Part shown: in pieces, positions 23,370 to 26,300 of the stretch | Layout of the letters: each line of letters begins with the position of its first letter | Numbering within the stretch: the first letter of the stretch is position 1 | Source: Diadema antillarum | Taxonomy: Eukaryota | Direction of reading: 5' to 3' | NCBI RefSeq assembly: GCF_040938485.1 | Contig: NW_027272433.1 | Span: 1 to 64,000 of the forward strand | Length of the DNA: 64,000 nt | Made by a program: the position numbers and the translations under genes | Notes under the pieces: model-generated | The model's input: the letters and a program-made list of their open reading frames with translations, nothing else | Databases searched by the model: none | Told to the model about the DNA's origin: nothing

Positions 23370-26300
23370 CACCAACATCACCATTACCACCATCGTTGTC
23401 GTCATTACTATATTGTTCATCACTGTCATGAACATCGCTCAAAGTACTTTGGTCACTAGCACCGCCTCTTCGACAGACACGCAGTCATCACCATGCCAAC
23501 CAAGCAATACCTCACGCCCCTTACCACCAAATCTACTTACGTGTGTGATACAAGAGAAGCCCAGGAAGTACATAATAGCGCACGCCCCCAGGAGAACAAA
23601 AGGCTTCCTCTTCCGCAGTTGTGGAAACTCGTCGACGAGAGCCGTGACGAGATTTTCCATGATTGCGAACTACGAAAGGAGACAGAATCAGCTGAATTTA
23701 GACATGAGAAATCCTCACACATAACAAGATATTATCATATACAATGAACAATGAAACCTGTACTTGGACGTGATGAAATTGGTGCCTGCATGTGAAACGC
23801 GAAGAATATCAAAATATGACAATGCGAAGAACCAAAACACTAAGCGATTCCAGAATCGGTACAGAATGTGGAAGGTACATAATATTTGACTCAAGAGCTA
23901 GACATACCACGATTCGATATATGAAGAGCTTGCTTCCAAGAGGGCCTAAATCCATCATTTTCAATGGATTTAGCGCCTTTTGGTTGCAAGCTCTTCATAT
24001 CCTGATGCCTATATCTATAGCATAGTTAAGAACACACGAAGGAAAACGGAAATCCATTCCCCCTTTTTTCAAGACTGGGGCGATGTTTGAAGTAAGCAAG
24101 TTTGAAAAAAAAATGTCACGATCATTTTTGGTTTTCAAAATTCATATTATTTGTAAGACAAATAAAAACCCACGGACAAAAGTTTCACCAGAAACAACAA
24201 CAAAACAAATAAAACACACACAGAGCGAAAAAGAAAAACACAAACACAACTGACTTACCAACAATCACAAATTTAAAGTGACATAGACAACAGAAATATG
24301 ACAAGAACGAACTCTTTTTGTTTTCCTAACCTGACTATCGAGCCCAAGAGTGATCAGCATGCCGAAGAAGAGAAGAGACCAGAGAGGGGAGACTGGCATG
24401 CGGGCCACGGCGGCCGGGTAGGCGATGAAAGCCAGACCAAAACCTGCAGGAAAAAAAATTGTCGTTGCAACTGTTGGCACGAACTCCAAAGGTATCATAA
24501 TCGTAAGAACGTTCCGAGTGTACTATTATGTTTATCTACTACTATCGTTACTCATTACATTGCAACGGAACGATCACTTTCTGGCCATTGTGTTCATTCT
24601 CCATCTGAAACTCAGACCAGGCAATAGTCTCACAACACCCACTCCCCCGATTGTTTTGTTGTTGTTGGCATAATAATGATTACATTTCATATTACATTTT
24701 CAGAAAAACTATGTAATCTTTGTTCCAAGGACAAACCCATGAGCTTTTAAATACAACAATTCTTATTCATGCGTATCATTATGCATGTCGGGCAAGTCTC
24801 AGGGCTAACTTTCTATTTGTTGGAAACAACTATCTCTATTGTAAAAATATGCACAATATTCGATGTGGAATATGTTACTGAACAGGTTCTTATTTAGCTG
24901 ATTAGAATTGTCAAATTGTCGAATTGTCGATACCTTGCTGAACGACGGTTTCAACGGGCTGGTTGAGTTCGTGGGCCATGAATCCCACGATAGAGAAGAT
25001 GACGAAACCAGCGAAGACGCTTGTACAGCAGTTGGCGATGGCCACGAACATGGAATCGCTGTCGAGAGAAAATAATCGACTCTTAGATAGACTCAGGGAG
25101 GTGAGCCTCCTCCCTGATAGACTAGAGTATAATCAATCTAATTGATTGAATTGTAAATGTTGATCAAAGATATCTAATAGTTACAATTAACTAGTCATCC
25201 AGGTTAAAATCACTCAGATATCATCATGTTGATCGCAGAATAACCAGTCCCGAAGAAGACGACATAGGCATTGTTTTCACCGTTGTAAAATACTTTACTA
25301 TCATAATAACTCCCCGAGAAAGAAACGCATCATTTTCTTATTGTCTTGAAGACGTCTTCAAAGTGTTCGTTCTATGGAACAATGACTATCTCTTACAAAC
25401 GAACCCAAATTCAAAATATTTACCCTAATGTCGGAGATGACATTTTGACTCACGTAATATGAAATTTAATCCCTATCAAAAATGTATCCTGAATCATGAA
25501 AAGATTTCCAAGGAAATAGCATGATATCAGAATGTGAGCTTGATTCTGTCCGTTAAAAAATGCAGGCCATTTATAATTTTAAAAAAGAGAAAAGGTGTGA
25601 AGTGAAAATAGGAAGTTTTTCCAAAAGTCAAATAATCTTTTTTTTTTTTTTTTTTTTGTAAATTCAATTTATTGAGTGGCTCATATCTCTACATGTTTGT
25701 CTTTTAGATAGGCTTCTTTTTCCCAATAATACAATGATTTTTTACAAAATAGTTTCACACATATACGTATGTATTCTCCGTATCATATTGATGTCTTCTA
25801 ATTGTATCGGGAAAAATGTGATTTTGGAAGCAATAATTTGATTTGGATTTGAAAAAAAAAACATCCCAAAATCCATTGCTTCAAAACGGAGCGGTAGAAC
25901 AAGTTGTAGCTACAAAAATATCGCTGATTAAATATCTTGATTTGTTTCGCATCATAATACGATGACAGCTTGACCTACCCATATGAGTTGTTGTGGAACT
26001 TGTTGTATGAAGCTAGAGTAACCAGACCGCCGCCCGCCGCACTCAGCGAGTAGAAGATCTGAATAGCTGCATCCCGCCATACCTGTTGATTTCGCGGCAA
26101 GATTGGAAAACGAAAAATCATATTCACTCATGAAAAGGCTAAAACAAAGACAGGAATTCAAGAAATATTCCCGAGAAATAAAACATTTGACTGATTGGAT
26201 AATATATTGGAGTATAATGTTTCATTTCATTTGCCTCTTATATACATTCATTATAGCTCGCAAAGCTAGCAATTTAAGTTGTCATGATCAATAAATAAAA

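What the first reader, a model, noticed from the sequence alone, without database searches (positions are those of the whole stretch)
26032..26034. SLC6 transporter has Gly at the TM6 substrate-pocket position that is Trp in GlyT2/ATB0+ and Phe in LeuT/PROT
Seen: the TM6 exon reads [25 protein letters not shown] (codon GGC, - strand). Established: GlyT2 is FFSLSAA-W-GGL (W482), ATB0+ FYSLSVA-W-GGL, PROT FYSLGVG-F-GGL and LeuT FFTLSLG-F259. This residue forms the floor of the S1 pocket, and shrinking it broadens specificity toward larger amino acids. The rest of the machinery looks intact: TM1 GYAVGLGN (amino-acid type G), TM3 YYN, Cl- site residues Y/Q/S/S, Na2 site LDS, and four EL2 cysteines as in GlyT2. 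The LeuT I359-equivalent position is Ile (QFAIMEN), not Thr as in GlyT2. Inference: an automated pipeline would probably call this a glycine transporter, but its pocket is much larger. It may carry bulky or aromatic amino acids or another solute, for example in uptake of dissolved amino acids from seawater.
Basis: partly seen in the sequence, partly recalled or inferred. Interest (0 to 1): 0.7.

Follow-up and report, generated by a model that had tools for sequence, protein, structure and literature searches.

The report
Sea urchin amino-acid transporter lacking pocket tryptophan
A sea urchin (Diadema) gene for a sodium-driven amino-acid transporter really has a tiny glycine where its vertebrate relatives have a bulky tryptophan in the substrate pocket; the change is old, conserved across echinoderms and probably alters what is carried, but no substrate has been tested.

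Summary
[quoted passage not shown] It aligns with Trp482 of human GlyT2 in the unwound part of TM6.

- **Not an error.** Contigs from two DNA studies of the species show no other letter at the codon. A related species differs in this exon only at three synonymous sites.
- **Not private.** The motif [13 protein letters not shown] occurs in two paralogue lineages of four other sea urchin species and in a sea cucumber.
- **One clade.** These proteins lie in an echinoderm clade of 19-20 sequences (bootstrap 100, SH-aLRT 97) in which no member keeps Trp; they have G, S, A, T, L or C. All 41 other Trp-type echinoderm paralogues and all 16 chordate relatives compared have Trp.
- **A coupled change.** The position of GlyT2 Met276 is Gln in 20/20 clade members and Met in 41/41 Trp-type echinoderm paralogues.
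- **Machinery intact.** The Na1, Na2 and Cl- residues and the Na3 glutamate are kept.

The most likely reading is a working Na+/Cl- amino-acid symporter with a reshaped pocket that is not glycine-specific. Substrates and expression are untested. It is a new variant of a known kind, of moderate interest.

The parts
26032..26034 (-). Codon GGC = Gly539 of the protein. It is the centre (Phi) position of the (G/A/C)-Phi-G motif in unwound TM6, equivalent to human GlyT2 W482 and LeuT F259.
   Evidence: reads
25979..26082 (-). Coding exon 9 (TM6a, unwound segment, TM6b), residues V523-Y556 plus two bases of G557. Acceptor is cag|GTA, donor is GG|gtaggt.
   Evidence: its translation is an exact substring of XP_071479957.1; Pfam SNF positions 250-283
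20204..41538 (-). Whole coding span of the SLC6 gene, 15 coding exons, encoding Diadema antillarum XP_071479957.1 (907 aa). Coding exons: about 41538-41488, about 36200-35962, 33104-32751, 31079-30902, 29597-29466, 28642-28300, 27775-27643, 27243-27109, 26082-25979, 25058-24934, 24443-24331, 23669-23541, 22249-22034, 21428-21264, 20506-20204. The stop codon is at 20203-20201.
   Evidence: splice sites read; tblastn of P0212; exact exon matches; Pfam SNF 648 bits. The borders of the first two exons are approximate.
28626..28628 (-). Codon CAG = Gln324, equivalent to GlyT2 Met276 (TM3, a proposed Na3-site neighbour of A481/W482). It is Gln in 20/20 members of the non-Trp clade and Met in 41/41 Trp-type echinoderm paralogues.
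   Evidence: PMC4919009
23661..23663 (-). Codon for Ile639 (TM8), equivalent to LeuT I359, GlyT2 T582 and ATB0,+ S423/S427, the second 'volume sensor' position. Asn642 at 23652-23654 replaces a Thr kept in 39/41 Trp-type paralogues.
   Evidence: PMC9564218; PMC9599917
22196..22198 (-). Codon TAC = Tyr697 (TM10), equivalent to GlyT2 L641. It is Leu in 38/41 Trp-type paralogues and Tyr in the Gly/Ser sub-clade. Glu704 at 22175-22177 is the retained GlyT2 E648 (Na3 glutamate).
   Evidence: PMC4919009
30902..31079 (-). TM1 exon with [14 protein letters not shown]. It has the amino-acid-type Gly rather than the Asp of monoamine transporters, and carries Na1/Na2 ligands.
28300..28642 (-). TM3 plus EL2 exon: Val331 (= LeuT V104, ATB0,+ V128, GlyT2 I283), Tyr334-Tyr335, and four EL2 cysteines.

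Best explanation
The window is from the sea urchin Diadema antillarum. The codon lies in the TM6 exon of an intact 15-exon gene for an SLC6 (neurotransmitter:sodium symporter) protein, XP_071479957.1.

Shown here:
- Gly539 is genuine. It occupies the centre of the (G/A/C)-Phi-G motif in the unwound stretch of TM6, where GlyT1, GlyT2 and ATB0,+ have Trp and LeuT has Phe.
- The protein is not a GlyT2 orthologue. It belongs to an echinoderm-only radiation sister to chordate GlyT2/ATB0,+. Inside that radiation, one well-supported clade lost the Trp once and now carries G, S, A, T, L or C.
- Gly is fixed in two sea urchin paralogue lineages and in a sea cucumber.
- The loss is coupled to Met to Gln at the GlyT2 M276 position, next to the TM6 break. 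In the Gly sub-clade it also goes with T582I, T585N, L641Y and an E to A change in EL4.
- The residues that bind the substrate's carboxylate and amine, Na1, Na2 and Cl-, and the Na3 glutamate and tryptophan, are all retained.

Inferred:
- The protein works as a Na+/Cl--coupled alpha-amino-acid symporter of the LeuT fold, probably with 3 Na+.
- Removing the indole opens a space beneath and beside the S1 site, now lined by Gln324, Asn642, Tyr697, Val331 and Ile639. The Gly-Gly-Gly run also makes the TM6 hinge more flexible.
- The transporter is therefore not glycine-specific. It most likely takes larger neutral amino acids, and possibly polar or cationic ones.
- That would suit concentrative uptake by epithelia, for example from gut contents or dissolved amino acids in sea water.
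For: - **Sequence and splice sites:**. Every core exon translates exactly into P0212 = XP_071479957.1.
- **Family and fold:** Pfam SNF 648 bits over profile positions 1-522 of 524. PDB best hit is human GlyT2, E 2e-193, with all ion-site residues aligned. The AlphaFold model has pLDDT 87 and a TM6 break at S536-G540. Foldseek gives TM-scores of 0.83/0.90-0.96 to GlyT2 structures.
- **Codon in reads:** confirmed in contigs of two studies; a related species shows only synonymous changes in the exon.
- **Purifying selection:** the D. setosum orthologue differs at 18 of 907 residues, only 3 of them in the 615-residue core.
- **Conservation of the motif:**
- **Trees:** the non-Trp clade has SH-aLRT 95 among 86 rows and UFBoot 100 / SH-aLRT 97 among 62 rows, with the Gly sub-clade at 97/85. 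Only 4 changes between Trp and non-Trp are needed on the tree.
- **Correlated positions:**
- **Literature:** W482 keeps the GlyT2 pocket compact and W482L/F broaden specificity (PMC13273173). The TM6 Phi residue tunes pocket volume in MhsT and LeuT, and no human SLC6 has Gly there (bioRxiv 10.1101/2020.04.03.022970). The proposed Na3 site is E648/W263/M276/A481 (PMC4919009).
Against: - No substrate, ion-coupling or expression data exist for this protein or any clade member in the sources I could reach. No RNA run was available, and the Logan fragments of the S. purpuratus cluster are genomic.
- ATB0,+ is broad-spectrum although it keeps the Trp. Presence or absence of Trp therefore does not predict breadth by itself.
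- The correlated larger or polar replacements (L641Y, M276Q) could refill the cavity and keep the pocket small.
- Spatial closeness of Q324, N642 and Y697 to G539 is inferred from homology to published GlyT2 descriptions, not measured.
Confidence: 0.6

Rival explanations
1. Compensated pocket. The transporter still handles only small neutral amino acids (glycine, alanine, serine, proline). The space left by the Trp is filled by the co-evolved Gln324, Tyr697 and Asn642 side chains or by ordered water. The Gly mainly changes hinge flexibility or kinetics, not substrate size.
For: The Gly never occurs alone. M276Q is present in 20/20 clade members, and L641Y and T585N are fixed in the Gly sub-clade. 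S479, Y287, F476Y and G210 are kept as in glycine transporters. From PMC12189403 and my own memory, the only cloned sea urchin SLC6 amino-acid transporters (Meyer and Manahan 2009) were studied with alanine, a small substrate. That paper was not held.
Against: In GlyT2, even Trp to Phe or Leu lets leucine and methionine through. Gly removes far more volume than Gln and Tyr add. Sister paralogues in the same clade carry L, T, A, S or C at this position, which looks like diversification of specificity rather than one compensated state.
Confidence: 0.25
2. Different solute class. The remodelled pocket serves a non-proteinogenic solute common in marine invertebrates, such as taurine, beta-alanine, betaine, another osmolyte, or D-amino acids, rather than L-alpha-amino acids.
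For: The pocket combination G/Q/I/N/Y matches no characterised SLC6 member. SLC6 branches have switched solute class several times, as shown by the GAT, TauT, BGT1 and CreaT structures among the hits.
Against: The protein sits firmly inside amino-acid branch I, next to GlyT2 and ATB0,+. TM1 AVGLGN, TM3 YY and TM6 S-L-S match alpha-amino-acid carriers. The TM6 motifs of the GABA/taurine/betaine branch (GLG, CLG, CQG with S-F/Y-A/G) are absent.
Confidence: 0.08
3. Artefact or dead copy. The Gly is a sequencing or assembly error, or the gene is an unexpressed decaying duplicate.
For: The window has three N gaps in or next to the gene's introns and a partial duplicate of the TM5 exon start beside one gap. 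No RNA evidence was obtainable.
Against: The codon is supported by contigs of two studies, and a related species changes only synonymous sites in the exon. The motif is identical in six species and two paralogue lineages. All 15 exons are open with canonical splice sites. The D. setosum orthologue has 3 differences in 615 core residues.
Confidence: 0.02

Closest known systems
Human GlyT2 (SLC6A5; PDB 9wbr, 9hue, 9km3)
   Same: GlyT2 is the best PDB match by sequence (E 2e-193, 47-48% identity) and by fold (TM-score 0.83/0.90-0.96). TM1 GYAVGLGN, Y286-Y287, S477, S479 and A481 are identical. The Na1, Na2 and Cl- ligands, the Na3 residues E648 and W263, and E248 are kept. EL2 has four cysteines. 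The N-terminus is long (about 215 residues) and Ser/Pro-rich.
   Different: W482 is Gly, M276 is Gln, T582 is Ile, I283 is Val, F476 is Tyr, L641 is Tyr and T585 is Asn. It is not an orthologue: it lies in an echinoderm-only radiation. Glycine-only specificity is therefore not expected.
ATB0,+ (SLC6A14), broad neutral and cationic amino-acid transporter
   Same: RefSeq names the protein after ATB0,+. The chordate ATB0,+ plus GlyT2 group is sister to the echinoderm radiation. Val at the LeuT V104 / ATB0,+ V128 position is shared. Broad specificity is the function proposed here.
   Different: ATB0,+ keeps the TM6 Trp (W323/W327) and has Ser at the TM8 sensor position, where this protein has Ile. 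If both are broad, they reach that by different pocket architectures.
MhsT and LeuT, bacterial NSS with a GMG or GFG motif in TM6
   Same: The fold and the unwound TM6 are the same. The centre residue of (G/A/C)-Phi-G is the established tuner of pocket volume: MhsT M236F abolishes aromatic substrates. Ile at the LeuT I359 position and Val at the V104 position match LeuT.
   Different: Here Phi is Gly, so no side chain is present. The listed known motifs are GMG, GFG, AFG, AWG, CLG, CQG and GLG. This protein is also eukaryotic and Cl--dependent by sequence, with long termini.
Sea urchin amino-acid transporters of Meyer and Manahan 2009 (Biol Bull 217:6), cited as 'SLC6A5' in PMC12189403
   Same: They come from the same animal group and the same SLC6 branch, and have the same proposed role in taking up amino acids from sea water (for the citation; details from my own memory).
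   Different: The paper was not held. I could not determine whether the cloned genes belong to the Trp-type or the non-Trp clade.

Membership tests
SLC6 / neurotransmitter:sodium symporter (Pfam PF00209 SNF) | Full-length match to the SNF profile | tested here: met
   P0212 scores 648 bits, E 1e-194, over profile positions 1-522 of 524. The exons cover the profile colinearly.
SLC6 / neurotransmitter:sodium symporter (Pfam PF00209 SNF) | LeuT fold with 12 TM helices and an unwound TM6 | tested here: met
   AlphaFold model with pLDDT 87.2 and pTM 0.87; TM6a is 306-320, the break is 321-325, TM6b is 326-332 in model numbering. Foldseek top hits are GlyT2, GlyT1 and PROT with TM-scores of 0.82-0.96.
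SLC6 / neurotransmitter:sodium symporter (Pfam PF00209 SNF) | Na1, Na2 and Cl- coordinating residues (GlyT2 A208, N213, S479, N509; G206, V209, L574, D577; Y233, Q473, S477, S513) | tested here: met
   All are identical in the alignment to chain 9wbr_A; T578 is Ser.
SLC6 / neurotransmitter:sodium symporter (Pfam PF00209 SNF) | Na+/Cl--dependent solute transport | not testable with these tools
   Needs an uptake or electrophysiology assay.
Glycine transporters GlyT1/GlyT2 (SLC6A9/SLC6A5) | Orthology to vertebrate GlyT1 or GlyT2 | tested here: not met
   The protein falls inside an echinoderm radiation (65 rows, SH-aLRT 99), separate from the chordate GlyT2 plus ATB0,+ group. The GlyT1-like sequence lies outside both.
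Glycine transporters GlyT1/GlyT2 (SLC6A9/SLC6A5) | Trp at the centre of the TM6 A-W-G motif (GlyT2 W482), which keeps the pocket glycine-sized | tested here: not met
   Gly539. The role of W482 is from PMC13273173.
Glycine transporters GlyT1/GlyT2 (SLC6A9/SLC6A5) | GlyT2-type S479 and T582 | tested here: inconclusive
   S479 is kept; T582 is Ile.
ATB0,+ (SLC6A14) | Orthology to vertebrate SLC6A14 | tested here: not met
   At most a co-orthologue of GlyT2 plus ATB0,+ together.
ATB0,+ (SLC6A14) | Pocket residues V128, W327 and S427 | tested here: not met
   Val is kept, Trp is Gly, and Ser is Ile.
(G/A/C)-Phi-G motif of unwound TM6 (bioRxiv 10.1101/2020.04.03.022970) | A hydrophobic or large residue (F, W, L, M, Q) at the centre | tested here: not met
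   The motif is A-G-G. None of the listed human or bacterial motifs has Gly at the centre.
3-Na+ coupled SLC6 (GlyT2-type Na3 site, PMC4919009) | E648, W263, M276 and the A481 backbone | tested here: inconclusive
   E704, W311 and A538 are kept; M276 is Gln324. In GlyT2, M276A did not change Na+ affinity. Stoichiometry itself is not testable here.
Echinoderm non-Trp SLC6 clade (defined in this report) | Placement in the clade, no Trp at Phi, and Gln at the GlyT2 M276 position | tested here: met
   UFBoot 100 / SH-aLRT 97; Gln in 20/20 members against Met in 41/41 Trp-type paralogues.

The most novel reading that the evidence does not exclude
Echinoderms evolved their own family of concentrative amino-acid transporters by deleting the TM6 tryptophan of a GlyT2/ATB0,+-like ancestor, together with a Met to Gln swap beside the TM6 break. 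They then spread the now-free position over G, S, A, T, L and C in different paralogues, so that each paralogue takes a different class of amino acids. Under this reading, these are the carriers behind the long-known uptake of dissolved free amino acids from sea water. The Gly forms would be the widest-pocket members, carrying bulky, polar or cationic substrates. The same solution arose again in unrelated marine animals, as the Gly-type fragments in ocean metagenomes suggest.
Probability: 0.25. Interest if true: 0.65.

Novelty: new variant of a known kind. Interest (0 to 1): 0.42.

Why it matters
The TM6 centre residue is the best-studied size gauge of SLC6 pockets, and it matters for GlyT2 and other drug-target family members. 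No characterised member has Gly there. This clade is a natural, conserved 'side-chain deletion' with its co-evolved partners (Gln for Met276, Tyr for Leu641, Asn for Thr585).

- It gives a ready-made set of variants for testing how pocket volume and hinge flexibility set specificity.
- It also allows a test of whether the Met276 position talks to the TM6 break and the third Na+ site.
- For marine physiology, it names concrete candidate genes for amino-acid uptake by echinoderm epithelia and larvae.
- Diadema antillarum is also of ecological concern, although nothing here links the gene to its disease or die-offs.

Tried and rejected
- **Exon-fragment searches gave few whole proteins.** The one representative-library search with the TM3/EL2 exon returned mostly exon-sized fragments and only a few full-length proteins. 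It served only to pick P0009 as a seed.
- **Alignment A1 was unusable.** Aligning all 12 exon pieces to P0009 in one MAFFT run scattered the fragments, so I discarded it. A smaller alignment, A2 (three full-length proteins, the TM6 exon and one fragment), worked as a profile.
- **The TM6 ORF fragment search** found only three candidates, all Gly-type and from ocean metagenomes. Their other exons are only 30-44% identical to the echinoderm set, so they are not orthologues.
- **No expression evidence.** No RNA run was listed. Run X16 covered only repeats. The short Logan members of the S. purpuratus cluster read through an intron and are therefore genomic.
- **Meyer and Manahan 2009 is not held**. 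Searches for Sp-AT1, echinoderm SLC6 and insect NAT pocket residues gave nothing on a Gly at this position.
- **Sequencing error, pseudogene and GlyT2 orthology** were considered and rejected, as set out above.
- **Pocket volume and docking** could not be done, because model coordinates are not exposed.
- **No joined exon sequence was made.** The RefSeq protein P0212, returned by a tool and identical to the exon translations, was used instead.
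Full report
**1. The observation.** On the minus strand, 26082-25979 reads [34 protein letters not shown](G), and GGC at 26034-26032 is the first Gly after SAA. The piece is bounded by cag|GTA and GG|gtaggt. 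phmmer against all PDB chains places it on human GlyT2 ([35 protein letters not shown] 4e-13), then GlyT1, PROT and the monoamine transporters. In chain 9wbr_A, which keeps native numbering, the Gly is opposite W482.

**2. The gene.** Stop-to-stop frames on the minus strand between 20.2 and 31.2 kb hold twelve pieces that cover Pfam SNF positions 1-473 in order. Every junction has GT..AG and a consistent phase. A profile search returned P0212, RefSeq XP_071479957.1 of Diadema antillarum. [quoted passage not shown]
- All thirteen exon translations whose borders I had set exactly are substrings of this protein.
- tblastn places its first 215 residues on three further exons at about 41538-41488, 36200-35962 and 33104-32751.
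- The window is therefore D. antillarum, and P0212 is the spliced product.
- The three N gaps at 20680-20826, 27424-27633 and 30464-30663 lie in introns.

**3. Is the codon real?** Contigs of two DNA studies of the same species (X1 depth about 23, X2 depth 2.4) cover 26017-26095 with no difference reported. A contig from a related species (X3) covers 25936-26170. Inside the exon it differs only at 25996, 26017 and 26020, which are third positions of Phe, Thr and Val codons, while the intron flanks carry indels. The table omitted 88 rows, so this is strong but not absolute evidence. It agrees with the D. setosum orthologue XP_072176373.1, whose TM6 exon product is identical. That protein differs at 18 of 907 residues, only 3 of them in the 615-residue core. 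A second D. antillarum contig encodes a copy with three differences.

**4. Family membership and machinery.** P0212 matches SNF over 522 of 524 profile positions and human GlyT2 at E 2e-193. An AlphaFold model of residues 216-830 has pLDDT 87.2 and pTM 0.87. It shows TM6a, a five-residue break at S536-G540, and TM6b. Foldseek ranks GlyT2, GlyT1 and PROT structures first, with TM-scores of 0.82-0.96.

Retained residues in the GlyT2 alignment:
- Y207, A208, G210, G212 and N213 in TM1.
- E248 and W263.
- Y286 and Y287.
- Q473, S477, S479 and A481.
- N509 and S513.
- L574 and D577.
- E648.

Residues that differ from GlyT2:

| GlyT2 residue | This protein |
|---|---|
| M276 | Q324 |
| I283 | V331 |
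| F476 | Y533 |
| W482 | G539 |
| T578 | S |
| T582 | I639 |
| T585 | N642 |
| L641 | Y697 |

**5. Relatives.** Among full-length hits, Trp dominates at this position. The motif [13 protein letters not shown] recurs in two lineages:
- The long form, 896-909 aa, in D. antillarum, D. setosum, Lytechinus variegatus, L. pictus and Strongylocentrotus purpuratus.
- A short form, about 657-675 aa, in the same urchins and in the sea cucumber Apostichopus japonicus.

An 86-row maximum-likelihood tree puts all echinoderm and hemichordate sequences in one radiation (SH-aLRT 99), beside a chordate group holding GlyT2, ATB0,+ and tunicate genes. Inside the radiation, one clade of 20 rows contains no Trp at all.
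- Sub-clade A has brittle-star Ser, sea-cucumber Gly and sea-urchin Gly in two paralogues.
- Sub-clade B has sea-urchin Gly in a GAGG context, starfish Leu or Thr, and brittle-star Ala, Ser or Cys.

A careful search on 62 rows gives the non-Trp clade UFBoot 100 / SH-aLRT 97, sub-clade A 98/96 and its Gly part 97/85. Trp versus non-Trp needs only four changes on the 86-row tree. Three exon-sized fragments from TARA and GROS21 ocean metagenomes also read S(V/T)AGGGL. Their other exons are only 30-44% identical to the set, so they come from other animals.

**6. Correlated positions.** I compared the seven Gly rows with 41 Trp-type echinoderm rows.
- The strongest partner is the GlyT2 M276 position. 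It is Gln in 20/20 non-Trp clade members, Met in 41/41 Trp-type rows and Met in 15/16 chordates.
- M276 was proposed to line the third Na+ site together with E648, W263 and the backbone of A481, the residue next to W482. M276A left Na+ affinity unchanged (PMC4919009).
- Further changes fixed in the Gly/Ser sub-clade are T585N (Thr in 39/41), L641Y (Leu in 38/41), YPEA to YPAA in EL4 (Glu in 38/41), and Leu to Met in TM11 (Leu in 41/41).

**7. What the literature says about the position.**
- W482L and W482F are reported to allow alanine, leucine and methionine. The authors conclude that the bulky side chain keeps the pocket compact (PMC13273173).
- In MhsT, the G-M-G loop moves to fit substrates of different size, and M236F abolishes aromatic substrates. 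[quoted passage not shown] None has Gly in the centre.
- Against a simple size rule, ATB0,+ keeps the Trp and still carries 18 amino acids, so the authors doubt that this residue is a volume sensor there (PMC9564218).
- ATB0,+ breadth has been tied to V128 and a polar cleft with S427 (PMC9599917).

**8. Most likely mechanism.**

Shown:
- The gene is intact, conserved and under purifying selection.
- It encodes a LeuT-fold SLC6 protein with all ion and backbone-binding residues.
- The Trp was lost once in an echinoderm clade.
- The loss is coupled to Met to Gln at a neighbouring TM3 position.

Inferred:
- The protein is a Na+/Cl--coupled alpha-amino-acid symporter. It probably uses 3 Na+, because E648 and W263 are kept.
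- Removing the indole opens a space under S1, lined by Gln324, Asn642, Tyr697, Val331 and Ile639. The Gly-Gly-Gly run loosens the hinge.
- The carrier is therefore not glycine-specific and takes larger neutral substrates, perhaps polar or cationic ones.
- A role in concentrative uptake from gut fluid or sea water is plausible but untested.

I put about 0.6 on this reading. The compensated small-substrate pocket gets 0.25, another solute class 0.08, and artefact or dead gene 0.02.

**9. Comparison with known families.** It works like, and is a member of, SLC6. It is not a GlyT1 or GlyT2 orthologue and fails their defining Trp. It is not an SLC6A14 orthologue and lacks two of that transporter's three discussed pocket residues. 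It breaks the (G/A/C)-Phi-G rule at Phi. I found no paper describing this clade or a Gly at this position. The one functional study of sea urchin SLC6 amino-acid transporters, Meyer and Manahan 2009, is cited in PMC12189403 but is not held.

**10. Verdict.** The finding is real, and the gene itself is already annotated. What is new is the recognition of a conserved echinoderm clade without the pocket Trp, together with its coupled Met to Gln change. This is a new variant of a known kind. Interest is moderate, because function and expression remain untested.

The earlier scan note s1-215328, on two paralogous N-terminal exons at 32751-36207, fits what I saw. The two exons encode residues of about 18-97 and 98-215 of P0212 and cross-match at 37-45% identity.

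Noticed in passing
window 27331-27400, beside the N gap at 27424-27633: A partial second copy of the start of the TM5 exon (…VMYFTATFP…) lies just downstream of the gap in the TM4/TM5 intron. The complete TM5 exon is at 27243-27109. This looks like an assembly duplication at a gap edge, not a real extra exon.
   Followed up: partly
window about 22350-22740 and about 23810-24000: Intron stretches with contig depth sums of 1e4 to 1e6 in every run laid, including the related species. Many joints and loose ends are present. These are high-copy interspersed repeats.
   Followed up: no
window 32751-33104 and about 35962-36200 (minus strand): Two Ser/Pro/Thr-rich N-terminal exons of the same gene cross-match at 37-45% identity.
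   Followed up: partly
window 61191-61997 (+): A single open frame of 268 aa matches haloacid dehalogenase-like hydrolase families (PF00702 E 1.5e-23, PF13419, PF13242). It is probably a separate intron-poor gene.
   Followed up: partly
window 53881-54300 (-): An open frame contains a piece of the GDP-fucose protein O-fucosyltransferase family (PF10250, E 1e-7, profile positions 151-192). It is probably one exon of a neighbouring gene.
   Followed up: partly
P0333 (XP_071496180.1), a different D. antillarum contig of 858,795 bases: A second D. antillarum record encodes the same 907-aa protein with three substitutions (P31A, A170T, A362T). It is either a haplotig or a very recent duplicate.
   Followed up: partly
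L001:3109-3351, L002:500-688 (TARA and GROS21 ocean metagenome contigs): SLC6 exons from unidentified marine animals also have Gly at the same TM6 position (SLSTAGGGL, SLSVAGGGL). Their intron layout differs, with TM5 and TM6 in one exon, and the neighbouring exons are only 30-44% identical to the echinoderm set. The Gly variant therefore recurs outside echinoderms.
   Followed up: partly
S. purpuratus contig of 35,917,773 bases; D. setosum contig of 37,745,034 bases: The long Gly paralogue, the short Gly paralogue and, in S. purpuratus, the GAGG-type gene (P0304) lie on the same chromosome-scale record. The two D. setosum accession numbers are 18 apart. This suggests a linked paralogue cluster.
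   Followed up: no
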